Part shown: positions 1 to 30,913 of the stretch, piece after piece | Position numbering within the stretch: position 1 is the first letter of the stretch | How the letters are laid out: each line of letters begins with the position of its first letter | Assembly: GCF_964204865.1 (NCBI RefSeq) | Contig: NC_135261.1 | Span: 12,276,001-12,340,000, forward strand | Direction: 5' to 3' | DNA from: Styela clava | Lineage: Eukaryota | Length of the DNA: 64,000 bases | Program-made: the position numbers and the translations under genes | The notes under the pieces: generated by a model | The model's database searches: none | Seen by the model: only the letters and a program-made list of their open reading frames with translations | What the model was told of the DNA's origin: nothing

Positions 1-185
1 TTACGCAGATTTTCCTGAATATAAAGTTATTATGTCAATATTCGTATAGCACGACAAAATCAAGTGCGATAATTCCAGTAATCGCCAGTTTATTTCTATT
101 GGGAACTGATTAGTGTTTACAGCCTAATTTCTGGGATCATGAATGCGTAAGTTATGCGAATTGTTGTGATATTAATTAAGTTACA

Positions 186-597: not shown

Positions 598-1636
598 TCA
601 CATTATCTGCATACAAGTCTGGTGAAAAAAAGACAGATCGAGTAAAATATTGAATAAATTTGAAAGCAAAATATATACACACATGCTCTTTAGCTCGAAC
701 TTTATCCATTTTCTCGTTTTCTTTTTTGAAATTGTCCATGGAACACTTCAACGCTTTCAAATCGCCGACTATCATATCTATGTTCTGTTTCATAGAATCA
801 ACCTTGCAAAAAATCAAACAAACTTTTATTTTTTAATTTGAACGCTATTTGCATTGTAAAAATAAAATTAATTTTATCGAAAAAAATCGCCAGTTTTGTT
901 GCATCTATTGATTTTTATATTGATCCTATCCAATTGCACTGATATTTCTATGGAATAAATCGACTTAGCTACGCTAACCTCTCCATTCAAGCTGTCCATG
1001 CTTCCCTCCAATATCTGGACTTTATCGGACAGATCTTTCATCAATTTTATTTCTTTTTCCATGTCGCTGTGCAAATCATCAACTCTGACGCGTACGGAAT
1101 CGTCGCGGGAAGCATTATTTTTTAGGCTCCGTAATTCCCGTCCAAACTCAAGTCTTGTTTCTTCAATTTTCTCGTTCAGTGTCTGGATGATTTTCAGCAT
1201 GTCCGACTTCGTCTTTTGTTGGTCTTCTCCGAGTTGCATGGTCGCCTCGCGGTTTGTCCTTTGGATAAGGCTAAGTTCACTAATCCATCTCTCGATCTTG
1301 ATGAGTTTTGTTCGCATCCATGACTGAAATGTTTTTTTTTTATTAAAAACATTTATTGTTCACAAAAAATTACTTTGAACTGTCAAGAACTGTGAAAAAC
1401 AGCCACCTTTCATAGCGAATGTCAAAAATAATAATCTGCAATTTCAAATTCTAAGAATGTGTCTGCTAGTCTGAGCTCATGAAAGATTTGTTTATTAGAA
1501 AGAATACAATTAGATTATATCTGAATTATACGATTGCGACTAGCCAGACTAAAAATATTGTAGTATCACTCACCTTTCCCTCTTTATTGCCACTTTTACC
1601 TACTTTATTATTTTTCAACACATTAACGTCGGACAT
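598..1636 (-). CDS. Uncharacterised coiled-coil protein (multi-exon; 3' end uncertain)
   Basis: Exons 1636-1574 (MSDVNVLKNNKVGKSGNKEGK, donor gtgagt), 1323-979 (SWMRTKLIKIERW...LNGE, ag/gt bounded) and 802-~683 (VDSMKQNIDMIVGDLK...) are all phase 0 and join in frame. An in-frame TGA lies upstream of the ATG. The sequence is heptad-like and E/K/L-rich. A possible last exon is 618-598 (TCMQIM*). Confidence 0.65.
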
Positions 1637-7590: not shown

Positions 7591-9358
7591 TTGTAAATCT
7601 GAAGAACACACAATTTTTTTTTGATACATCTTCGCAATTGCAGAAAATTTAAGTCATAGTTACAATGTCTGCATAAATATTGAAAACTGGTCCATACAAT
7701 GTCTTTGGATAGTTATATATATATAGCCTATTCCGTTTCTTAGTTTTTGTTTAAATATGCTCATGTAATAATACATCATAACGTATATGTTTATAAAGAC
7801 CTCATGTGACCAATGAAATAATTTTCACTAAATATTGTTTGTCCTAAGCTTTACAGGGGTGAACGGGCATGGGTGAGGAGACAATGTACACCGATGTGAT
7901 CTCCTGTTGGTGATATCTAGTCCAGTCGTTTTATCGAACAATTCGTTGCATATGTTTATTCTGCCTGTCTTTTGTTTTGCTCGAGGTAAATATTAGATGA
8001 TATATCGTAAGAAAATTTGATTCAAATTAGGTTTTGATAACATACGAAATACTGTTCAGTATCAAAGTGATTGCAACACTAGAAAAATTTCAGTTTTATG
8101 TGGAATTCTTCATGTCAATATCTCAAGTTGAAGCAGTTTTTGCAATATAGTAGACCGGATCTGAATTCTGTTTTCAAGTTTTGTGCACATGCATGAAGTA
8201 TGAATCTATAAAATCTGAAGTATACCATTTGTAACACACGGAACGGAAAAAACAGTCGAATAAAAGCTATGTGAACATACAGAGTTAAAATAAATTTCAT
8301 GAGATTTGGATTTTATTTAAATTTTTGCGTAATCTCAACTTGAAATCTGTCCGGTATAAAAATTGACAAAATTATAAAAATGCCTTCGAAAATTATCTGA
8401 AAACACTATTTTCTCGTTTTTTCTTTTTCAAATTTCGATTTTCAATCAGCGTCGAGGATATATATAAACGCAGATTTTATCGTGAAAAAATTGTTATTTT
8501 TTGTTTATTTTGATTGATGGTTTAATCGATTCCTGCGGTTATGCCGCAGAAGGGTAAGAACGCAATGTTCTGCATTAGACGATTGTGTGGTTTGGCCTGA
8601 AGACAATTCAAAGTTTATCTGAACTCATAAAATTCGTACAGACATTACGCCACTAATTACAAGATGATTGAGTCGCACTCCTCCAAACTGTGAATTGACT
8701 TTAAAAATGTGAACTGAATTTCCATTATTACCTAAAAGACTTTGAGTAAATAAAATATATCTAACTGGTTTGAACAATAGTGGAATTAATGACAAAATTT
8801 GTCTCTAGTTTTCTAGAGACATTATAGTTTGTACCAACTATTTGAAAAAGAACCTCAGAAATATAATTACAACTGAATAATGGACTGATCATAGAAAACC
8901 CACATAAGCAATTGCTTGGGGCAAGGGCGTTAAACTCGCAAAAGGATTTTCAAATACCCGATTTTCCGGTTTTGCGTGCTAATGGTATTTTGTTATATAA
9001 ATGTTAAGATGGTATTCATGAGCTAAAAACGACACAAACTAGACTAAAGAGAGAGATTTCTTACTAGCATTAAGTCGATACATTTTCTTCTTTGAAATAC
9101 ATCTCTACAATTGGCTGCTTGAAATTTTTTTTTATTTCTGATTAGTTGAAATTTACAACTCGAAGTTGAAATTTTATATATTAATACCAAAATAGTTGTA
9201 CCGTCACATTAAGGGCGTTTATTGTATGGGAATGACAGTATTACCTGGGTATAATATTGAGAGTGCATAATTCGTTAATAGTTCTAAAAAAAAAATAAAT
9301 CAAGATTTATTTCAGCTGCAAGAATAATTTTAATCAAACCGAGATAACTTGTATAAAT

Positions 9359-11359
9359 ATGAAGTATTTGGTTGTATTCCATCTTCTCATTGTTGGTGTC
9401 TTTGGCACCATGTATGAGAACGAAGTCAATGTAAAGCAACACTTCGCTAGTTTTGACAAGCAGGTATTTCTTATTGTAAAAGTGATTTACTCAGTAAATC
9501 ATTAGTTTCTAGCGTTTTTTACACATTATTCAAGTTAGAATACAACTTGCTTATAACTTGCTCAACATCATTTCACGTGAAGTATCAATTGTATTTATTT
9601 TTATTTTTTGCATTCAAGGTATCCAAAGATGAGGCGGATAGGTTTCATTATCCGACAGACAGAGATTTTGAATTCCACAAATTTCCAAATTGTGATACTT
9701 TCAAGTAAATATTTTAGAATGCCCAGTACTTATCACATTTTTCAAGCTTGCAGGGGACTGGAGGATGAATTGCACATTGCGGGAAAATCGGACTCAGTTT
9801 TCCGCAATGTTAATTCGAATCGTATATTTTCTCTGTAAACATGAATACATACATGTACATATGTAACGATTAGCTAAATTGTTGTTAAGATGATATTCAT
9901 TGTTTGGAAAAAAAAAACTAAGAGACCTATTTCAAATATTCAGTAATTAATGATAGTTAAGCCGCTAAAAGCTATTTTAATTTTCGAAATTTTCTATAAG
10001 CTCTATGAAGCACGATATCTCACCCCAAATTCTACAATGCCAGTGCTCATTGATTTCCGATTTTGATTTGAAACTTTTAAATGGTGAGATGAGGTTTCAG
10101 TGATTGACGCATAATTAATCTACCAGTACTTGTGTACGTCAATGGATCTCTGTGACTATTTTAGAATTACTCTATGGATTTCAAAAAAAAATCCATACTG
10201 TTTCGACGACACCCAGAATGAACTTTGTGTTTCCACTGGCAAATAATCTCAATTAAAATATAATTGAGATTCTAGAACTCTATATATATATATATATATA
10301 CATATATATGAATTGATGTCTCAAATATAAATATGTAATTCATTTCTCTAGGTTATTCTCGGGTCCGGAAGAATCGTGCACCGCTTCTAACCATGTCAAA
10401 CAACATCATATTGATCATATTGATCGCCCGAAAACAAGCTGCAGTGAGAAGATATGCATTCAGCGTTCGCATTTTGCTTCAACAAAATGCACCAGAGTGG
10501 TCAAGTTATACAAACCTTACGTTCACAAAGCAGTTCAATGCAAGTTCGTGTTTTTTATATTAAATATTATCATAATAACAACATATATTGTAACTGCATC
10601 CTTAAGTTGAAAGCGTATGTAGATACATATTCTTACGATCATATAATGTGTGTAGATCATTGCTGTACTACTACTGCAAGAAAAGCGTAAATGCTTCCAG
10701 TTAAATTAGGTTGCATTGTTTATCTAATTCTTTATTGTTTATCTAATTTACCGCTCAAAGGTAATTTTTTTTACGCTATATGCGAAACACCACTGGGGTA
10801 AAATCGAGTGAAATGATACAATGTCGTTCAAGAAGTTTTTTTTTCAAATTTCCAGAATTCCAGACCAACATTGTGATCATGAAGAAACTAGTTCCGAACA
10901 CCTGTATCCTTCTCCGAATGATCACGTTCAAAAACACAATCATGATCAAAGCTCTAATTTGTATCCATCACCAATGAAATCAAAACACGAATCTAAAGGC
11001 CAGTGTAGATGTTCCACCATATGGTGTTACCGCAGCATTCTAGCAATCTACAAGAACTACGGAAAACTATACAAAGGAAATGTTGATGTGAAAGTATGTA
11101 GAGTTTTTGAACTCACATTCCCTTTCTATCTTCTTGAATTACCTTTTACTTTTTTCGTGCTTTTTATTTTCTTTTTTAATCTTCTCACTCATCCTTTTAT
11201 GTTCACTGTTCACTAACATCTGCCAATATCATTTCATCTATAACCCCCCTTTTTTCTGTACGTCGTTATCGAGTAATATGTTAATGAAACATTTATTTTC
11301 AGATTCCATGCGGATGCGATTGTAGAAAGCACAACAATCACAATTTCCCATTACTTTAG
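9359..11359 (+). CDS. Secreted His-rich cystine-knot protein, Spaetzle/coagulogen/neurotrophin-like (225 aa, 5 exons)
   Basis: Exons 9359-9463, 9619-9704, 10352-10543, 10856-11093 and 11303-11359; all GT-AG, intron phases 0,2,2,0, 678 nt open. Signal peptide MKYLVVFHLLIVGVFG, 13 Cys, C-terminus QCRCSTIWCYRSILAIYKNYGKLYKGNVDVKIPCGCDCRKH. AATAAA at 11461. Confidence 0.8.
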
Positions 11360-12399
11360 CAGAAATTGAATAACATTTGTACTCAATATAACATTGTCAA
11401 CAATAATAACTACAGTATATACATGTCGATTTATATGGTATATTGTTGCAATCGAATGAGAATAAAAAACTAACTAATAATAACCGAGTTTCCTAGGAAG
11501 ATATAGTTTTAAATCCTCGAGAGCCATGAGCTACCATTTACACGTTGGTAAAAAAAACATTTTTGAAGATTATTTGTTAAATGAATACAATCATTTTGTC
11601 TGAGCACCTGACAGCAAAGTTTTAGAGATTAGGACTTGAGCTTTTGAAATATAGTAGTGCGATATTTTTTTTGGAATAGGGAACCCATCGCCGACAAAAT
11701 AAGGATGTTATAAAAACCCAATAGCACTGATGAATTGACTATTTTATGGTAGAACGCTGATAAAGAGCATTGGCAAGAGCAAATGACAAACGAAATTTAT
11801 TTGATTCGTAAACAAATATCGTACTATAAGCGGACTCGAGGTAATGCCTAAAAAATGAATTTTTCATAGATAATCCACAAAAGAATAAGCTGACACGGCT
11901 AATTTTATGCCAGAATGTTTTTCGCCCCGTTACTAGTCCAAGTTCAATATAAAAATAGCTAACTGGGATGGGGCAAGCTGTCAGCGATAAGCGGATACGC
12001 GTGCCACCACAAGCCATCGTGACATCCGCAAATTCCAACGTGTGAAGACGTGATGTGAGGACGCTAAAATGTTTCACAAACAGTCGAAGCGTTTTAGCCC
12101 TATTTGAATATTTTGGTCCCGAAGCAATAAGCGGTAGATTTAAACATCAATCAGGAACAATATCGCCTTTCCTCTCTAAAATCATTCAATCTATCCTACT
12201 TTACTGGCAGTTATTTTCTTTTAATCACGTTGGGAAATGCAGCGTATAAAACGACTATTCACCTGTACAATGACAATGATAATTCAAAACGCCGCAAATC
12301 TAAAATACGAAAATATTACTTATATTAAGTCATGGCCTTATTTGAGAGTGAAAATTTATAGAATTCTTCTCAGGATGAGTCGTTTAGTTTGTTACTCAA

Positions 12400-14550: not shown

Positions 14551-17500
14551 TTAATAATGTCGTGACATCATGTAGCACGTGATTACGATCATGTGAGCGG
14601 TAACCAGCATTATTGTGTTCACACTCAGTCTTGAAGCGTGACTCGTTGTAGATTCAGATGAAGACTCGGTAAACATTGATGTTGAATTACTGGGCGTTTC
14701 CATGGTAGATACATTTTTAATAAATGGACCTCCATAACCAAGATCATCCCAAAAGTCACAAATTTCGGCTCTAAATTCATACCTAACCTCACTAGATTGC
14801 GAACGGATGTACATATACGGCCATGGTTGACTTGAACCTGTAAATATCAGGTAATGCGAGTGTTTAATATTATAAAATGGCTAACCTCGAAATATTTGAT
14901 TCATGAAATGGAATTGACTATTTTATTCGAATCTCACAAAATATTAGAATTTTCACATCGCAATTTGCAGTTCCTATAAGTTGACAATGTTCAAACCAAC
15001 AATCGCGTGGGTGGTATAATAGTTAAAGCATCATATGACAATAATTCATGAACTTTCATATAATAAGCGTCTATTTCATTTATGATCACTTAGGCGTAAA
15101 CTGACATAAAGACGGAGAAAAGGTTTACTTTAAGCGATATGTCACATGAAAAACTGTTATATATTTTATTTTTAATAATTGTACTTAGCCAGGATATACC
15201 AATGAGACATGCTAATTATGAAACATATATTAACTACCTTATTATAATTGACACGGATAAGTGATGCGAAAGTTCGCAAATAATATTTTAGTGTAATAAT
15301 CGTGTAACAGAAGGGAAATTTTTTTGTGTCTAATTGACAAATTGGCGATGAGAATCTTGTACGGATAATAGTTAATCATAATACTTACCGTCACCGGTAT
15401 TGTACTTAGGCCATGATGGAAAATTTTCTTCAAAGTTTAACAAACCACTGGACGGGTTTCCTGTTTGAGCGAAGCCAGCCCAATATATGCTGAATTGATT
15501 CTCAACAGATAAGTGATCTTCCGTGTAGGTTTCGAAGCTGAATAATAGATTTAGATAAATAAATATAAATAGGTTTTCAACAAACTTGACCCAACTGATC
15601 GATAACAAATTCAATAAAAAAATGACACAAAGTGATGGCTGATGAATCGTATTATAAGAAGTAACTTTTTTTAGATTAAATTTAAAACCTAACGCACAGT
15701 GTTTTTTCCATTCCTAGGTTTCCTTATTACATACCTAACTTCTTCAACTGTTCTGAAAACAAATGGCACATCAGCTGAATGGTAAGAATAATAACATCCA
15801 GTGGCGTTTCCGCCATTCGCATAAAAGCAACCCAGAAAAAGTACCTTTTCATCAAAAACATAATAATACACGGAAGCAGATGTCGTATTTGCTGCTAATC
15901 TAAAACAATGTAATACAGTAGATAAATATTTGAGATTTACTTAATTATATATATTGGGATATTTTTCGGCGCTCCACAAGTGTGTGTACCAATATGGAGG
16001 TAACTAATTTTGTTCGTCTACTTTACATCAAGTGCGTAAAGGAATTGAAACCTATGTGGGTACATTCACTTGTCTAACATTGACAGTACCCGAACTCGTA
16101 ATAGAACTAAAATACGAAAAATCGGAATCAAATTATGGCCTAACCTTAACCTGGGACACACACTACGGGAGTACCCATTTTACAACGTATTCTCATTGCT
16201 CTAATGATAAAACTAATAAATCATATACTGATGTGAAATAGTAAAGACTTATTTTTCGTCAGCAATGGCTATTGTTTCTTTTATTCGGGCATGACGGAAC
16301 ACCTGGTGAGTATCATGGTTCGTTTCCAAACAATAATCTGTTCTGGGAATTGACGTTCTATTTTTTTTTTATTTTTTTTTTATGTCAAAACTTGTGTCAG
16401 CGACAAATACACTGGTAGGTCATGAACGTTATTTCAAATACTTTCTAAATGTTTTTACAGTGATATATAGTTAGTTACCTTGCCATATGCCTATTTGGAC
16501 ATGTGAATGTGTATTCTGTTGTCTGCTTCCCATAAGTTACTCGATAATCTTCACCTTGATTGGGTGGATATATTTCCATGTATTTGTCAACGATGCTTCT
16601 TGCCATTCCTATATCACCAAATGCGTCAACATTGGCAGCCTGAAACGAATTTTCAAACTTTCTATTACTAATAAAATACAAATTAAATATTATGTTTACA
16701 TAAGGTCTCACTATTTGTTGATCTATTTATGTTGACTAGAACAAAAACATACCTTTAATCAATAACTTACAAAAAATATATTTTCAGTGTAGTTGAATTG
16801 TTTTGGAATGGAAAACATGATGATGTCGTACTCTTCGGCAGTAACACCGATAATCATATCTTTTTCAGAATTCCAATTTCCGCTCCTGTATAACTCCATC
16901 GGCCAATCGGTAAATTCAACCCCATCAATTATAGGTAGATAAGTTTCGGATGTATAAAGCCCAAAACCTTCTTCCTGAGCCGTCGATTCTTGTACCAATT
17001 GTGTTTGATTTATAATATGTTGTGCGGACGAATTGCTGTTAGACGAAGATATAAACAAAAAATATGAATAATGCTATAAATTATATTAGAATAGGAATTA
17101 TCATAGTGGCTCCAGATTTAATTACACTAAAGCAGAAAATAGGATAAAATATAATACATCACATCAAATAGAAATGAAAAATGTATCATGACCTATATAC
17201 TCATGTTGCCAAAATGACAAGCTTACATTAAACAAGCTCTTTCGTCTCCGGTACATCCTAAACTTTGTAATAATCTGTTAGTAATCCTCAGTGACATCTC
17301 CGGTGAAGGATAATAAAATGAATAGGCAGCTGGATTACTTTGTTGAATTGAGTTCGTGTAAAGATTTTTACTGATGGGGGAAAGTGTATGGAACATGACA
17401 GATTGCGCTCCAGCACTGTCTCCAAATATTGTGACCTGAAATGAAAAGAAAAAATTCAAAAACACCACAAAGCATGAAGCAGTATGTAACTTGAAACATT

Positions 17501-19718
17501 CCATTTCTGCAAATAGTTTATCATTTCAACACTTAAAATACTAACGAAACAACAAACCCTGGTTTTATCTCCTCCGAAATTTTCAATATTTTCTTGGACC
17601 CATTCTAAAGCAAGTTGCTGATCTTTCAATCCTTGATTTCCACCTATGCTATTTTCTTCTGCTTGTTGATGCATCAAAAAACCTAGAGGACCTTTGCAAA
17701 CATACGTAACGCTGTTTATACTCATTATACGTAGATAGTACGTAGAAGGGTGAATTTTGCCAAATGAAAACATGCAGTGAATCGTAATTTGATATGAAAT
17801 GTTTGTCGTTCAACATTTGCGAGTGCTTAGATTTACATAGGTTTTTTCTGAACCAAGTACGGACATGATACATTATACATAAACTATTAAAAAGATAATT
17901 TATACCTAAACGGTAATTAATGGTAACAACCACTGTATTTGTGAAATTGGCAAGTTCTCGTCCGTCCGTTCTCGGCTGTGTTCCTGAATTTATTGTAAAA
18001 AATCCTCCATGAATATAGAATAATACAGGAAGACGATCAGATGGAGGTTTAGAAGAATCACTCAAATCCAAAGACGATGGCGTGAACACATTTAAAATTA
18101 AACAGTCTTCTTTCATCTGCAATAATTCACAATACCAAATTTATTATCATTATAAATTGTAGAGCCTTTGTTACAATTATTATAAGGTTAACTATAAAAC
18201 AACTTTTAACTGATTTACCAAGAAAACGATACATACATACAATGCAGTTTGTGTATTGTTAATGGGGGTTTTATAACAATTTTATATTCTCTATATATAT
18301 ATATGCAAGTTATTTTCAATGATGAGCTATATATAACGATATATATTTGTTAGAATCGAAGTTATCATAATTTCACCGCTTACATTTAAAATACATTGTT
18401 CTTCAGTGACAGATTTACAAACATCCTCGTATTGATAGCATTGAAGGAAGTTGTTTGAAGTTCCATTTATATGTTCATGGGGTATTGTAATCTTTTGAGG
18501 CGGCTGAAACCTGAAAATCAGTAATAATATTTATTTACATTGCCTCGGCATAATTTTCAATAATATTGGGGTACTTGTCATTTTATAATTACTTTTAAGT
18601 TTGTTCGTCTTATAAATGTACGATTGAAGATATCAAAACTTTTTCAGTGTTTTTTAATATGTTTGATTTATTGTATTGATTTACTATTTGTTTCTAACCA
18701 AAAAAGCTCGGCAATTAGCGGATCTATCTTTATTGGATAAATAATCACATTTACGATAGAAACATTAAGATGAATATATAGTTTCGGACAATGTGCAATA
18801 GATATTGAGATGAACTTTTGCGCAAACTTATTGTATACTGAAAATACTAACCTTAACTCGCCTATGGGTGGTTGAGCATAAGGAATCTCCCAAAATGCAT
18901 TGGATTCGGCGGTCTTTGCTCCAGAAACTAATCCCGACGAGGTGTTTACTTGAGGGAAATCCAGTGTAACTTCTACAAATAAAGCGATGTATCGAAGTCT
19001 ATTCACGTGTTTTAATAATATTTTGTGCAGTTTCATTTATTCAAGTACTATTATCAATTACAAATCGTTTTTTTTCAAATTTAGATCGACATCGTAACTA
19101 ATATTGGTATATGTCAAACGTAAAACGATTATGTTTCGTTCCATTAATGGAGTTCAACCATTTTTACAGAAACTTATTTTTCTGCACCTTAGGTTGCTTT
19201 GCTTCGAATTTTGTTAAAAAGTTTCGAATACCAAGTTTACAAGCAAAGAACAAGAAATATTTCGATTATTTAACTAACAGTTTAGTTTGCGTGAAACTAA
19301 GTACATTTCCTTGCTCTCTATGCCTTTGCGCAGGTGGATGCGTATTACGCAAGGCTGTATGCGTATTACGCAAGGATGCTGTAGCAACAGTGTAAATGGC
19401 TATTCTATTCAATTCAAGAGTCTTGCTGCACATGAACACAAATACATTTCTGTAACGTTTCGTCTGACCGAGGTCAGAAATATATTGTGTTCGTGTACCG
19501 CACGACTCTTAAATTGAATAGAATTCGATTATTGTTGTTATTTTGTGTTGAAACATACCACTAATTCTTCTCGATGCACGAACAGATTCAATTTTCAATC
19601 GGTTACTTTGTACTTCGCGTTTATATGATTCATACAAATTAGGGCCATTTGGTACATTTAGAGATTCTACAATAACAATCCCATAAAATGCTATGGCAAA
19701 TGATATTTTAGAAACCAT
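14551..19718 (-). CDS. Type-B carboxylesterase (cholinesterase fold), predicted GPI-anchored; copy A (662 aa, 11 exons)
   Basis: Exons 19718-19559, 18972-18852, 18510-18384, 18116-17906, 17691-17558, 17435-17227, 17035-16771, 16639-16479, 15899-15735, 15537-15389, 14837-14551 total 1989 nt with no internal stop. Motifs: [43 protein letters not shown] (Ser), GVTAEE (Glu), YHSAD (His), CDFW; S/T linker plus hydrophobic tail. Confidence 0.93.
15968..16175. mobile_element. ~210-bp non-autonomous element in intron 8 of copy A
   Basis: Imperfect terminal inverted repeats ggcgctccacaagtgtgtgtacca / tgggacacacactacgggagtacc, a subterminal cctaaccttaacc motif and T-rich flanks. Confidence 0.55.
19285..19480 (-). 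repeat. Penelope-pLTR-like short repeat with partial hammerhead-like core (intron 1 of A)
   Basis: Minus strand reads TCTGACC-TC-GGTCAGA-C-GAAACGTTA-CAGAAATGTATTTGTG. The downstream part aligns with 57540-57670. Includes a tandem atgcgtattacgcaagg x2 (19338-19375). Confidence 0.55.
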
Positions 19719-20101
19719 TATATTTAAACAATAAATACAAACCAATCTGTGTAAAACAAGTTCAAAAACAACTTTTGATTAGGATTGTCGATTAGATTAT
19801 AATGACTTCAACGTCAACGCATACTAATTGTATATTGAAGCTAAAAAAGCATTCCAAGATGGGAGGAGTTATTTAAAAAATAAATAGTTAAGTGTCATAG
19901 ACACGATCATATGTGAATGTGAGGCATTAAAAGTGGCTAATTTACAATCGACAGCTAAATTAAGAAATTTCGGCATTAAACTATACGATTAAAAAGCACT
20001 CAAGCAAACTGGATCAAAATTTTAAACAACTCAAGAAAGATTTTGTATAGTTTTTTATCAGTAAGATCCGAACACATATTTCGTCTTTAAACACTCTACA
20101 C

Positions 20102-20780
20102 CAGTGGTTCTCAAACGGTGGGGCACGCCGCACAAGTGGGCGTAGACAATTTTTTAAGGGGGCGCAAAGCTAAATAAAAATATGTTTTTTTTTTTAGATT
20201 CGATCTTGTTGTGAACTCCCAAAATGTAAACTTACAAGAAATCCATTCATTGTCAACGAGTACAGTCTGCCAGAAAACTGCCAAGAAGAATTCTTAGAAA
20301 TTAATTCAAAAGACGACTCTGGAACAATGCCACTCAGCGAAATCTGGGTTGAATATGCGAAAGTGTACAAAAATGTGGGTGATGTTTCTCTGCGAATTTT
20401 GATACCATTTTCTTCAACGTATATATGCAAAATTGGGTTCTCCACTCCAAAACACGTGGACACAAAAGCCCTAAACCAGCTTCCCTATGAAAGCGATTTA
20501 CGATGTGCATTTTCCAACACAAAACTTCAAATTAAAGATCTTGTCAGTTAAAAACAACTGCACCAATGAAAATAACAACAAATTTTGCTTGTTTTTAAAA
20601 CTCTTCAAATATTTCATTATTTACGTCCACGTATTTTCAACGTGTATTTTGAATAAACCATACTTTCGACATACTATCTGTTCTTTGTAACTTATTGTTA
20701 GCTAGTTATTTTTGTGGTAGTGCGCGAGACTTGACAAATTCTAAAAACCAGGTGCGGCTTAAAAAGTTAGAGAACCACTT
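20102..20780 (+). mobile_element. Internally deleted hAT (Buster/Charlie group) transposon
   Basis: TIRs cagtggttctc / gagaaccactt and 8-bp TSD ctctacac/ttctacac. The internal ORF 20327-20551 (…LRILIPFSSTYICKIGFS…ESDLRCAFSNTKLQIKDL) resembles the C-terminal dimerisation domain of Buster/ZBED5-type transposases. Confidence 0.9.
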
Positions 20781-22156
20781 TTCTACACCGTTTAAAAGAG
20801 TGAATGCAATTATAGAATTACAATATATTTTTTGTTTTATAACAATGTCTTTAAGTGTGAATAAATTTTATTGCAGTAAATAGGCGTGCGATATATATGA
20901 GTAAAATGATAATAAATGAAAAAAGAGACACAACATACTCCCTGCTGCATTTAAATAAATTAACTATTTTCTGATAATTGAAAATATGGAATGTTCAAGA
21001 AAAGTCAAATAATAATAAAAACCTATATTTAAAGAGCCATATTTAGAGCTAAGTGGAAGTTTCCAGATCAGACATACAAGGTCAAGAGGAACTGAACTAA
21101 TCATTTAATTGTTATACACCTAGGTCCTAGTTATAATGATAATGTCTTTTGTATAGGCTACAACTAAAGTCTGAAATATCTGAACAAATATTTTTCATAT
21201 AAACACTAAAATCAACTTTTTTTAATTTTTTATTCATATATATATTTTTTTATTTAATATATATAATATTCACAAAATCTCTATAATAAAAAATTCTAAT
21301 GTCAAGAAATGTGAACATCGGTAAAATCGTATTTGAAATTATTCTCTCAATGCCAGAATGTTATCAATAGAACAAAATTGGATAAGTGAGTACGTGGAAT
21401 AAAATAAAAAAATTAGAAAAAGTATTTTCCCAAGCCTGGTATTGTTGTTAACTATCTATGCAGTTAATTAGAATACGCTTACTACGATATGCCAGTACAT
21501 TTGCTGGAATTCCTCACATCGTTATCCTCAACCTCACACGACACACCTGCAAGTATTTTGATGCCCGAACAAACACGATTTATTTCCTGTTTACTCTTCT
21601 CTACGTAATTTTTTTGTGTCTAAAGACGAGGAATTCTTATAAAAGTTGGTAATTTTCAAATTCTGCATTTTTTGGCAAAATTGTTTATCAATCATAGTTT
21701 TAATTTACATAGTTAAATTTTGAAAAGTGTATAATTTCCTATTTTACATTGTTCGACATTTTTTTATTTGACAAATATAATATTAGGTAAAACTTTTTTT
21801 ACAACCTCAACTTCACTTTTCCCTATTCTTCTAATATCTGAAAATATTTTGTACCGATTCTTTCACCAACCAGTCGTGAGTAGCAACTGACTGAAAATTT
21901 TTAGCTTGCGTTTATCACAATGAAATTCAATGAGGTATAACCAAATATTTGCCAGTCAAACAGTGAAAATAACTCGGTTTAATCACGCGATCCTTTAAAA
22001 TGCGATCCAGCGTAGCGATATATGTCACATAATAGAATAGTATGGCCTTGAGAAAATTATAGGGTTAAGGAAGCGTGGAGTATAAACTAAAACTCAGCCT
22101 ATGAGCTAGATTGCATATTTGCCCATACTTTCGAGAAATCGGTCACGATGGCTTAA

Positions 22157-22364
22157 CATTGGTATTGTTCTCGATTTACCTAAAATAAGTGAACAATTGG
22201 AAAAAAGAGAACAAAAATTTACCAGGTCTAAAACCATTCTTGGGGTGGTGTGGCGTTGTACATTGGTATTGTTCTCGATTTACCTAAAATAAGTGAACAA
22301 TTGGAAAAAAGAGAACAAAAATTTACCAGGTCTAAAACCATTCTTGGGGTGGTGTGGCGTTGTA
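22157..22364. repeat. Perfect 104-bp tandem duplication
   Basis: 22157-22260 is identical to 22261-22364 (cattggtattgttctcgatttacc…ggtgtggcgttgta). Confidence 0.95.
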
Positions 22365-23941
22365 AATGATCCATCTAATACGAAACTAGGTTGCACTTTG
22401 CACATATATTCACCTTTTCGCCGTACTGGAGCAGTAATTATTACCTGTTGCCTTGTGTCGTTTTATCTTTGTTGTTGCAGCCACGCCTCAAATTCGACGT
22501 GTAAGAGTGAGGAAAATTTTACGTGGATAGATTTCAGATATTTGGTTTTAAACAGAAATATGATTTTGTATTGCACCGATGAAGTAATAATTGTCTACGT
22601 GCTATTTCATTGTGAAGATATCGGTATCTTATTTTTAAGTTGTAATATTTGTCAATATCACGGTACAAGATAAATCTGCGATAGATTGGAAGGCTTGCCC
22701 TTTTGCATAGTAATTATGGGTAAGATTGAAACTATGGGGCGCCACCTACCGATTCAATCATATAGAAATCACACACCGACTTCAATTGTTTATTCATGCT
22801 TCCACAATTGCCATCACAAAATAAACTGATTTCAATTGCTTAGTGGATGTAGTGCGTAGCATAAAGAAGCTTTTTATATACCATCCACTACATACCTATC
22901 TGAAATGAGTACTGAACCAATTTTATTTCTGTGTAGCTAAAACTTTGTCCAGTATGCATGTATGACGAAAAGATCTAAAACCCCGATATGACCAAATTTT
23001 CGAAACTGTACTAGAACGAAGAGGTCACTAACTCAACATTGTATTTGCGATTTTACACAACTTTAGCGTGGATTGCTTCTGGCTGTCGAAAATAAAAAAA
23101 TCAGTTGTAATGACTTGACCAACCACCTAGATTTTGATTTTTTTTTTAAACTTTCTGTGCATATTAAAACATTGGTCTTTGTAAGGTTTGTAAAGGTGTA
23201 ACACGGTAAAAAAAGGGGGGATATCACTATTATAAAGCATAAACACCAACCAATTTAAAATTGGCAGGGACTCAAAGAAGTAATTTATTGATAACACGGG
23301 CCGCCACTGTACGTAGGTGGTAGCTTTTTTATTAAATTATTTTAACGCCAATGTGTTTTACTGATGCTCGTTGTATCCTCGTAGTAAGATGAACTACGCA
23401 TGGCCAAATCAGCTACATGGAAATCGCATATGTTACATAGTAATTTTAATTGAATATGGAACATGTTTTGTCAAATATTAGGATATTCTGAAGCAGTATT
23501 ACTCTCTGTTCATAAATTAATTGATTTTTCAATGGAAGTCATTGGCTTGGATATTTTGAAATTTCAGAATAGAGTTTGGTACGAAACACTTTTTACATAA
23601 ATACCAACACCCACATCAAGGACGTTCATTCTTGTTCAAAGGCGTGCACAGCTCAATAAGACATTCGGGTAAAATTTAACTGAATTTTAGGATGCGATCA
23701 TGGGATACTGTTTTAAGCCGCAGTCTGAAATGGGACTTGTGAGGACTCCTTTGAAATCATTTAGATTGAAATGAATATGTCCCAATATTGAGTTCTGTCT
23801 TCATAACTTTGATTTGATAAAACTATATTTTGTATGTCAATCATCTAGTTTTTATATTTAATGCTATAATCTAACCTATAAATGTGACATGCAATTATTG
23901 TTCAAATTAACCTTAAAACATTTTCATGAAAGAATTCATAA

Positions 23942-30913
<6,972 letters not shown>

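What the first reader, a model, noticed from the sequence alone, without database searches (positions are those of the whole stretch)
9359..11359. Hidden secreted Spaetzle/coagulogen-like cystine-knot gene
Seen: five exons splice cleanly into a 225-aa secreted protein; only exon 4 appears in-frame in the ORF track. Known (recalled from memory): Drosophila Spaetzle ends ..EECEGADQPC..ICKQHYTQQTLASIKSDGELDVVQNSFKIPSCCKC, and horseshoe-crab coagulogen ends ..CCGCPCR. This protein reads ..VQCKIPDQHC[insert]QCRCSTIWCYRSILAIYKNYGKLYKGNVDVKIPCGCDCR, with similar Cys spacing and a beta-hairpin pattern. The odd Cys count (13) leaves one free for a disulfide dimer, as in Spaetzle. Inference: an NGF-fold cytokine or clotting/matrix protein. 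If the host is a tunicate, a Spaetzle/coagulogen-type ligand in a chordate would be notable, as a possible endogenous Toll ligand or wound/tunic gelation protein.
Basis: partly seen in the sequence, partly recalled or inferred. Interest (0 to 1): 0.85.

Follow-up and report, generated by a model that had tools for sequence, protein, structure and literature searches.

The report
Sea-squirt secreted NGF/Spätzle-fold cystine-knot gene
This is a real five-exon gene of the sea squirt Styela clava, already in RefSeq as "uncharacterized", for a secreted cysteine-rich protein predicted to fold like nerve growth factor and Spätzle. It is one of at least 41 copies of a family seen only in this species so far, and its function is untested.

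Summary
Five exons with GT..AG introns (9359-9463, 9619-9704, 10352-10543, 10856-11093, 11303-11359, + strand) splice into a 225-aa protein with 13 Cys and a signal peptide. It is letter-for-letter the current RefSeq model XP_077974727.1, "uncharacterized protein LOC120330410", of Styela clava, so the host is a tunicate.

The gene is not unique. A profile of its paralogs finds the same five-exon layout and Cys frame at 40 more loci in this genome. All public relatives are from Styela clava.

No sequence method places it in a named family. Pfam, PDB sequences, and the NGF and Spaetzle HMMs run on the genome gave nothing. A profile comparison with the genome's own IL-17 genes gave 0.9% probability.

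An AlphaFold model gives a confident four-strand core. Its best structural matches are vertebrate neurotrophins (Z up to 6.3). Gremlin, IL-17, PTTH, coagulogen and Spätzle follow at Z 3.4-5.1. Language-model features point to Spaetzle/NGF clusters (0.91).

The cystine-knot reading is therefore supported at fold level. Membership of Spätzle or coagulogen is not. Toll-ligand and clotting roles are untested, and three probable RNA runs held no transcript.

The scan has flagged this family before on other DNA of this genome (s1-815906, s1-829438 and others).

The parts
9359..9463 (+). Exon 1 (35 codons, ends in phase 0). It holds the ATG, a signal peptide (about residues 1-16) and the start of the conserved N-terminal segment.
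   Evidence: Translated. Mean Kyte-Doolittle hydropathy is 2.36 over residues 3-16. Matches family HMM positions 2-37 at E 3e-5. Donor is CAG|gtattt.
9619..9704 (+). Exon 2 (86 nt). It holds the conserved FxFP-like motif and the first conserved Cys (Cys60).
   Evidence: Translated. HMM positions 29-64 at E 3e-5; acceptor ttcaag|, donor CAA|gtaaat. This Cys is present in 38 of 38 paralog loci where exon 2 was found.
10352..10543 (+). Exon 3 (192 nt). It holds Cys73, 94, 99, 110 and 127, and the first long beta-hairpin of the knot domain.
   Evidence: Translated. HMM positions 64-122 at E 8e-17. AF2 strands at residues 34-46 and 52-67 of P0001, pLDDT 80-95.
10856..11093 (+). Exon 4 (238 nt). It holds Cys134, the variable loop, the CxC-x4-C cluster (Cys178, 180, 185) and most of the second hairpin.
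   Evidence: Translated. HMM positions 125-195 at E 6e-19. It has 54 six-frame matches in the own genome, this locus included. AF2 strands 117-134 and 137-155 of P0001, pLDDT about 94.
10875..11003 (+). Variable loop of 43 residues, rich in His, Ser and Pro, with two LYPSP motifs. It lies between knot Cys134 and Cys178.
   Evidence: Composition. pLDDT is below 50. The loop is 27-61 residues long in 32 paralog loci, which carry 0-3 YPxP-like motifs.
11303..11359 (+). Exon 5. It holds the CxCxC end of the knot (Cys210, 212, 214), a short tail and the TAG stop.
   Evidence: Translated. HMM positions 190-207 at E 2e-4; acceptor ttttcag|.
11461..11466 (+). AATAAA, a likely polyadenylation signal about 100 nt after the stop. 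This is an inference.
   Evidence: Pattern position. No transcript data are available.

Best explanation
LOC120330410 of Styela clava is an intact gene for a secreted protein. It has about 209 residues after signal-peptide removal.

Its C-terminal two thirds fold as a cystine-knot growth-factor domain: two long beta-hairpins tied at one end. The predicted shape is closest to vertebrate neurotrophins, within the NGF/Spätzle/coagulogen/IL-17 group of knots.

Three features go beyond that basic fold:
- A conserved N-terminal segment carries its own Cys, so it is probably disulfide-tethered to the core.
- A disordered loop bearing YPxP motifs, variable in length, sits between knot Cys3 and Cys4.
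- The frame has 13 Cys, which allows six disulfides plus one spare Cys.

The gene is a diverged singleton. No paralog exceeds 50-61% identity to it in the best-conserved exons. It belongs to a family of at least 41 loci that has been found only in Styela clava.

Inferred, not shown:
- It works outside the cell as a ligand, possibly a covalent dimer through the spare Cys. The best candidate is Cys110 at the tip of hairpin 1.
- The receptor is unidentified.
- The size of the family and its variable loop suit immunity, wound response or self/non-self signalling.

My odds: real gene with a cystine-knot fold about 0.85; signalling ligand about 0.45.
For: Gene model:
- It is identical to RefSeq XP_077974727.1.
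- The same five-exon layout recurs at nearly all of 40 paralog loci.
- The 13-Cys frame is complete in 22 of 41 loci. Single losses occur at HMM column 103 (Cys110 here; replaced by R, R, W, W, Y) and column 172 (Cys185; S, S).

Fold:
- The AF2 core has pLDDT 80-96 and four long strands.
- Foldseek's top 7 PDB hits are NGF, NT-3 or NT-4, at E 6e-3 to 3e-2 and probability 0.99-1.00; coagulogen ranks 8th.
- In the VIA search of 48,161 chains, almost all of the 42 hits at Z>=2 are cystine-knot factors, with NGF top at Z 6.3, rmsd 3.1 Å over 81 residues.
- In the second look, rows 1-25 are all neurotrophins, Z 5.2-6.3.
- An independent model of paralog P0002 gives the same ranking.
- ESM features of the full protein score 0.91, sharing 189 of 256 features with clusters that carry Spaetzle or NGF domains.

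Secretion: the N-terminus is hydrophobic, and signal-like N-termini are present in the paralogs.
Against: - No sequence method links it to any named family.
- The structural Z scores are modest (6.3 or less). The tool warns that Z under 8 can reflect only a common arrangement.
- The alignment behind the models is shallow: 13 sequences from one species.
- I could not read model coordinates, so the knot disulfides are inferred from Cys spacing and from the aligned ranges, not measured.
- No transcript was found in three probable RNA runs.
- No receptor or processing site was identified. There is no RxxR or dibasic site upstream of the knot.
Confidence: 0.62

Rival explanations
1. It is a coagulogen-like clottable or matrix protein. 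A trypsin-like protease would cut after the conserved basic residue at the exon 2/3 junction (Lys64 here). The N-terminal piece would stay disulfide-tethered, and the cut protein would polymerise in haemolymph or tunic repair.
For: - Coagulogen (1aoc) is a consistent hit: Foldseek rank 8 and rank 6 at probability 1.00, and VIA Z 4.5 and 4.4.
- In the full-length paralog model, coagulogen has the longest match (107 residues), running from the N-terminal segment (model residue 35) into the knot. The IL-17A (from residue 30) and Noggin (from 39) rows also start there but align fewer residues. It also has the highest identity, 18%.
- The N-terminal segment carries a conserved Cys.
- A basic residue is common just before the FSGP-like motif.
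- The loop is rich in Tyr and Pro.
Against: - No Pfam family, the coagulogen family included, matches any member at E<=10.
- The Z values are tied with or below those of neurotrophins.
- Forty or more diverged paralogs with a variable loop are not what one expects of a bulk clotting protein.
- No cleavage has been demonstrated.
Confidence: 0.13
2. It is a very divergent interleukin-17 family member. Styela has many IL-17 genes, and other notes from this scan propose IL-17-like families in this genome.
For: - IL-17A and IL-17F are structural hits at Z 4.5-5.0.
- Some Atlas clusters carry PF06083.
- The genome holds at least 32 PF06083 matches above the cut-off.
Against: - None of the PF06083 matches coincides with any of the 54 family matches.
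- hhalign of the family profile against 14 IL-17 domains from this genome gives probability 0.9%.
- The family keeps Cys in the positions inferred for knot Cys 1 and 4. [quoted passage not shown]
- Neurotrophins rank higher in both models.
Confidence: 0.06
3. It is a non-signalling cysteine-rich effector that happens to use a knot scaffold. Examples would be an antimicrobial, toxin-like or adhesive tunic protein.
For: - The family is a large expansion restricted to one lineage, with a variable loop.
- The mature protein is basic, pI 8.5.
- The loop is rich in His, Tyr and Pro.
Against: - All structural neighbours are ligands, ligand antagonists or coagulogen.
- The hairpin faces are well conserved across paralogs: 48-61% identity in the exon 4 core. 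That fits a binding surface.
- No direct data exist.
Confidence: 0.12
4. It is a silent or decaying copy, annotated only by prediction.
For: - Three probable RNA runs contained no contig of it.
- It is a diverged singleton.
Against: - The frame is intact, all splice sites are canonical and all 13 conserved Cys are kept.
- A second haplotype or assembly (P0001) also has an open frame, with only 3 substitutions in 161 residues.
- A DNA run shows no change in the exons.
Confidence: 0.05

Closest known systems
Vertebrate neurotrophins (NGF, NT-3, BDNF, NT-4; Pfam PF00243)
   Same: - They are the best structural match in two independent models: Z 5.0-6.3, with 79-95 residues aligned at 2.7-4.5 Å.
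- Both are secreted, and both have two long hairpins.
- A Cys lies where the aligned ranges put knot Cys 1, 5 and 6 of NGF and NT-3. This is an inference from the ranges, using neurotrophin Cys numbering recalled from memory.
   Different: - There is no sequence match: PF00243 finds nothing above its cut-off in the genome, and identity is 12-18%.
- It has 13 Cys rather than 6.
- It has no furin RxxR pro-site.
- It has a 27-61-residue variable loop between Cys3 and Cys4.
- It has a Cys-bearing N-terminal segment.
- The family has 41 or more members.
Spätzle / Drosophila neurotrophins (Pfam PF16077)
   Same: - Language-model features are nearest to clusters carrying Spaetzle (0.89-0.91).
- The Atlas structure search gives a best TM of 0.42/0.54 to a Spaetzle cluster.
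- The Cys count is odd, which is compatible with one interchain disulfide.
- The C-x6-C and KIP..CxC motifs resemble those of Spätzle.
   Different: - PF16077 gives no match to the protein or to the genome.
- The structural Z is only 3.4-4.9.
- No activating cleavage site was found.
Horseshoe-crab coagulogen (PDB 1aoc)
   Same: - It is a consistent fold hit.
- In the full-length paralog model it gives the longest match that runs from the N-terminal segment into the knot.
- Both end in C-G-C-x-C-R. The coagulogen side of this comparison is recalled from memory.
   Different: - There is no sequence-level match.
- The Cys number differs.
- No clotting cascade or cleavage is known in this animal.
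Interleukin-17 (Pfam PF06083)
   Same: Both have a cystine-knot-type fold (Z 4.5-5.0). Both families are expanded in this genome.
   Different: - The profiles are unrelated (0.9%) and the loci are separate.
- Tunicate IL-17s lack knot Cys 1 and 4 (PMC11087794). This family retains Cys at those positions.

Membership tests
Spaetzle (PF16077) | Sequence match to the Spaetzle cystine-knot domain profile | tested here: not met
   No Pfam family matches at E<=10 for the exons, P0001, P0029 or 13 family members. PF16077 has 0 matches in the own genome, but that search matched nothing in the control genomes either, so it is weak evidence.
Spaetzle (PF16077) | Cystine-knot fold closest to solved Spätzle structures | tested here: inconclusive
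   3e07 scores Z 3.4-3.6 and Aedes Spz1C Z 2.7-4.9. Both are below the neurotrophins, but they lie within the same superfamily cloud.
Spaetzle (PF16077) | Pro-domain removed at a protease site just before the knot domain; binding to Toll | not testable with these tools
   There is no RxxR or dibasic site upstream of the knot. A basic residue is common at the exon 2/3 junction. Neither cleavage nor receptor binding can be computed here.
Neurotrophin / NGF (PF00243) | Sequence match to the NGF profile | tested here: not met
   No Pfam match. In the own genome PF00243 gives only two sub-threshold matches, and they lie elsewhere.
Neurotrophin / NGF (PF00243) | NGF-type fold with six knot Cys (1-4, 2-5, 3-6) | tested here: inconclusive
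   It is the top structural match (Z 6.3). A Cys sits at the positions expected from the aligned ranges. I could not inspect model coordinates, so the disulfide pairing is not verified.
Coagulogen (Coagulin family) | Sequence match to the coagulogen profile or sequence | tested here: not met
   No Pfam match at E<=10. phmmer and hmmsearch against PDB sequences, which include 1aoc, return nothing relevant.
Interleukin-17 (PF06083) | Sequence or profile relation to IL-17 domains | tested here: not met
   No PF06083 match at this locus or at any paralog locus. hhalign against 14 own-genome IL-17 domains gives probability 0.9%.
Cystine-knot growth-factor superfamily (fold level) | Two long beta-hairpins joined by a Cys cluster, with structural neighbours drawn from that superfamily | tested here: met
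   AF2 gives four long strands at pLDDT 80-96. Almost all of the 42 VIA hits at Z>=2, and all leading Foldseek hits, are cystine-knot factors.
Styela clava LOC120330410-type family (unnamed) | Five-exon layout, 13-Cys frame, CxCxT[IV]W and PCxCxCR motifs | tested here: met
   The HMM built from paralogs hits all five exons. All 13 frame Cys are present. The motifs are seen.

The most novel reading that the evidence does not exclude
Tunicates are described as lacking the neurotrophin/Trk/p75 system. Styela clava would instead carry a lineage-specific family of 40 or more neurotrophin/Spätzle-fold ligands with complete knots. These would be true descendants of the ancestral bilaterian neurotrophin/Spätzle ligand, acting as endogenous ligands of Toll-like or other receptors in immunity, wound repair or allorecognition. 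This gene would be one old, diverged member.
Probability: 0.15. Interest if true: 0.8.

Novelty: new variant of a known kind. Interest (0 to 1): 0.45.

Why it matters
Neurotrophin signalling components were not found in Ciona (PMC2772990). Complete-knot IL-17 types are reported lost in tunicates and vertebrates (PMC11087794).

A large, unnamed, secreted family with an NGF/Spätzle-like fold in a tunicate would give concrete candidates for orphan ligands in chordate innate immunity, tunic repair or neural signalling. It would also be a case of a cytokine-type scaffold expanding rapidly in one lineage.

For this locus alone the gain is smaller. It confirms the RefSeq model, adds a fold assignment to an "uncharacterized" protein, and defines the family's 13-Cys frame and its probable spare Cys.

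Tried and rejected
- **Pfam.** Each exon, P0001, P0029 and 13 family members gave nothing relevant at E<=10.
- **PDB sequences.** phmmer and a profile search gave nothing; the one hit, a zinc transporter at E 0.6, is noise.
- **IL-17 reading.** This was my leading guess. I rejected it because the loci do not overlap and hhalign gives 0.9%.
- **Word-based homologue searches.** They found only Styela clava proteins. HMMER against 1.84 billion representatives gave 10 hits, all Styela clava.
- **RNA evidence.** There were no RNA contigs, and the DNA run showed two changes, both outside the exons. These were contigs, so absence is not shown.
- **Literature.** Nothing turned up for the LOC identifiers, for ascidian with coagulogen, or for Styela clava with cystine knot.
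- **Spliced model.** I searched exon by exon by reference, then used the public proteins P0001 and P0029 by id. A local script joined the exons only to count length and Cys and to test identity with P0029.
- **Cys co-loss.** I looked for paired loss of Cys among paralogs to infer disulfide pairs. There were too few informative losses beyond the two single-loss columns.
- **The search of earlier findings by sequence.** It came back blank, which means nothing.
Full report
**What is in the sequence**

The window is AT-rich (about 32% G+C) and lies at contig 16, 12,276,001-12,340,000 of its assembly. Reading 9000-11800 and translating each proposed exon by reference gives five pieces on the + strand:
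- 9359-9463
- 9619-9704
- 10352-10543
- 10856-11093
- 11303-11359

A script confirmed four points. The exons sum to 678 nt, which is 225 codons plus TAG. There is no internal stop. There are 13 Cys. Every intron is GT..AG, with lengths 155, 647, 312 and 209 nt.

**Is the model more than a hand-picked path?**

Yes, on three counts.
- A search with the ORF that contains exon 4 found P0001. This is the 164-aa RefSeq model of "uncharacterized protein LOC120330410" of Styela clava, and it joins exons 3, 4 and 5 exactly as proposed.
- The same 90% cluster holds P0029 (XP_077974727.1, 225 aa), recorded on a contig of 21,360,319 bases, the length of contig 16. P0029 is identical, residue for residue, to the spliced window model.
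- An HMM built from paralogous public proteins, with the locus's own protein left out, hits exactly five colinear + strand pieces between 8000 and 13000. The E-values run from 3e-5 to 6e-19, and the next best piece is at E 6.7.

The gene is already annotated, without a name or function. The older model lacked exons 1-2 and therefore the signal peptide.

**A family, not a lone gene**

Exon 4 has 54 six-frame matches in the own genome (this locus included), clustered on contigs 16, 19, 4, 6 and others. I fetched 40 of those loci and ran the family HMM over their six-frame pieces.
- Nearly all show the same five exons with the same profile boundaries.
- The 13-Cys frame is complete in 22 of 41 loci.
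- Two columns are lost singly. One corresponds to Cys110 here and is replaced by R, R, W, W or Y. The other corresponds to Cys185 and is replaced by S twice.
- Gaps at one further column (Cys134) come mostly from local alignments that stop short of the variable loop, so I do not read them as losses.
- The loop between Cys134 and Cys178 is 27-61 residues long across 32 loci and carries 0-3 YPxP-like motifs.
- This copy is diverged. Its best paralog identity is 50% in exon 3 and 61% in the exon 4 core. It is also the only family member in the window.

All relatives in public protein collections are from Styela clava. phmmer against 1.84 billion representatives gave 10 hits, and the profile-seeded word search gave 11. 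One hit, a 967-aa "ferroxidase HEPHL1-like" model with the family domain at its C-terminus, looks like an annotation fusion with a neighbouring family member on contig 4.

**Which known family?**

By sequence, none.
- Pfam gives nothing at E<=10 for the exons, P0001, P0029 or 13 members.
- PDB sequences give nothing for the protein or the profile.
- The NGF HMM finds only two sub-threshold matches elsewhere in the genome.
- The Spaetzle HMM finds none, though that search matched no control genome either.
- The genome has at least 32 true IL-17 domain matches. None coincides with a family locus. A profile-profile comparison of the family (A2) with 14 of those IL-17 domains (A4) gives 0.9% probability.

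I had favoured IL-17 at the start and now reject it.

**Fold**

AlphaFold2 on P0001 with the 13-sequence family alignment gives a mean pLDDT of only 63.7. The core, however (residues 31-69 and 115-159 of P0001), scores 80-96 and consists of four long strands in two hairpins. The N-terminus and the loop are disordered.
- Foldseek against the PDB ranks NGF, NT-3 and NT-4 first (E 6e-3 to 3e-2, probability 0.99-1.00), with coagulogen eighth.
- VIA-align against 48,161 representative chains returns 42 hits at Z>=2, almost all of them cystine-knot factors: NGF Z 6.3 (rmsd 3.1 Å, 81 residues), proNGF 5.6, gremlin 5.1, IL-17A 4.9, PTTH 4.7, sclerostin 4.5, coagulogen 4.5 and Spätzle 3.4.
- In the second look at Foldseek's list, rows 1-25 are all neurotrophins (Z 5.2-6.3). 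Gremlin, IL-17 and Aedes Spz1C (4.9) follow.
- A separate model of the full-length paralog P0002 gives the same order. There, coagulogen (Z 4.4) has the longest match, 107 residues running from the N-terminal segment into the knot.
- ESM Atlas features point to clusters carrying Spaetzle and NGF domains: 0.89 for P0001, and 0.91 with 189 of 256 shared features for P0029.

These Z values are modest, and the tool warns that Z under 8 can be a common arrangement. The uniformity of the hit list, in two models and two aligners, supports the cystine-knot growth-factor fold. It does not resolve the subfamily.

**Knot assignment (inferred)**

The aligned ranges are model 29..158 to NGF 11..115, and model 30..155 to NT-3 11..112. 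I combined them with neurotrophin Cys numbering recalled from memory. In 225-aa numbering this places:
- Cys94 at knot position 1
- Cys212 and Cys214 at positions 5 and 6
- by spacing, Cys127 and Cys134 (C-x6-C) at positions 2 and 3, and Cys185 at position 4

Seven Cys remain (60, 73, 99, 110, 178, 180, 210), enough for three more disulfides and one spare. Cys110, at the tip of hairpin 1, is the column most often lost alone. That makes it the best candidate for the free or interchain Cys. I could not read model coordinates, so none of this pairing is verified.

**How it probably works**

Shown:
- an intact gene
- a hydrophobic N-terminus typical of a signal peptide (mean hydropathy 2.36 over residues 3-16)
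- a conserved Cys frame
- a confident knot-like core
- a basic mature protein (pI 8.5)
- no N-glycosylation sequon, and no furin or dibasic site before the knot

Inferred:
- The protein is secreted.
- The N-terminal segment stays tethered through Cys60.
- The protein acts as an extracellular ligand, perhaps a covalent dimer.

The family's size, tandem clusters and variable loop suit immune, wound or recognition functions. The main rival is a coagulogen-like clottable protein. A non-signalling effector and a silent copy are less likely.

The genome shows at least three TIR-domain exons in one cluster on contig 10. Toll-like receptors therefore exist, but nothing links them to this protein.

**Expression**

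The run search found four DNA-like holders and no RNA holder. Contigs of three probable RNA runs laid on 9200-11600 gave nothing. The DNA run covered the whole stretch, with two changes, both outside the exons. These were contigs, so absence of expression is not shown.

**Context in the literature and the scan**

Ciona was reported to lack neurotrophin, Trk and p75NTR (PMC2772990). Tunicate and vertebrate IL-17s are described as lacking knot Cys 1 and 4 (PMC11087794). No paper mentions these LOC identifiers.

Earlier notes of this scan flagged the same or similar families elsewhere in this genome. One of them, s1-829438, sits exactly on the paralog I fetched as L045 (contig 16, about 6.923-6.927 Mb), where my HMM finds all five exons and all 13 Cys. 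The follow-up on s1-815906 reached a similar fold verdict on a ten-gene cluster. I did not test whether that cluster is the same family. My tests here were run independently on this locus.

- Searches were exon by exon by reference, then with the public proteins by id.
The statement that the family is restricted to Styela clava therefore rests on a single-sequence HMMER search and two word-seeded searches.

**Verdict**

The finding is moderately interesting: a new, lineage-specific variant of the cystine-knot ligand kind. It is already annotated as uncharacterized, and this scan has already noted the family at other loci.

Noticed in passing
P0007 (XP_039248989.2, 967 aa); own genome contig 4, about 17.93-18.01 Mb: A RefSeq "ferroxidase HEPHL1-like" model carries this cystine-knot family's domain at residues 839-956. 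Several family exon-4 matches lie on the same contig. It is probably an annotation fusion of a hephaestin-like gene with a neighbouring family member.
   Followed up: no
window 17652-18122 (-): This ORF matches the carboxylesterase family (PF00135, E 2.5e-20). It belongs to the esterase duplicates that other first-reader notes describe at 17227-26495.
   Followed up: no
window 877-1317 (-): A 147-aa ORF matches Paralemmin weakly and below the Pfam cut-off (PF03285, E 2.5e-5, 24.4 bits against a cut-off of 27.3). It may be an exon of a paralemmin-like gene upstream of the finding.
   Followed up: no
window 9307-9358 (+): A pyrimidine-rich tract ends in CAG at 9313-9315, about 44 nt before the ATG. 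TATAAAT sits directly against the ATG. That is too close for a TATA box, so the CAG might be a spliced-leader acceptor, as is common in tunicates. There are no read data to test this.
   Followed up: no
own genome contig 10, 21,227,269-21,249,627: Three TIR-domain exon matches lie within 22 kb, and one of them contains stops. They are a small tandem cluster of TIR-bearing genes and are candidate receptors to test against this ligand family.
   Followed up: no
window 10271-10317: A simple (TA/TATA) repeat lies in intron 2. Read laying skipped it and contigs break there.
   Followed up: no
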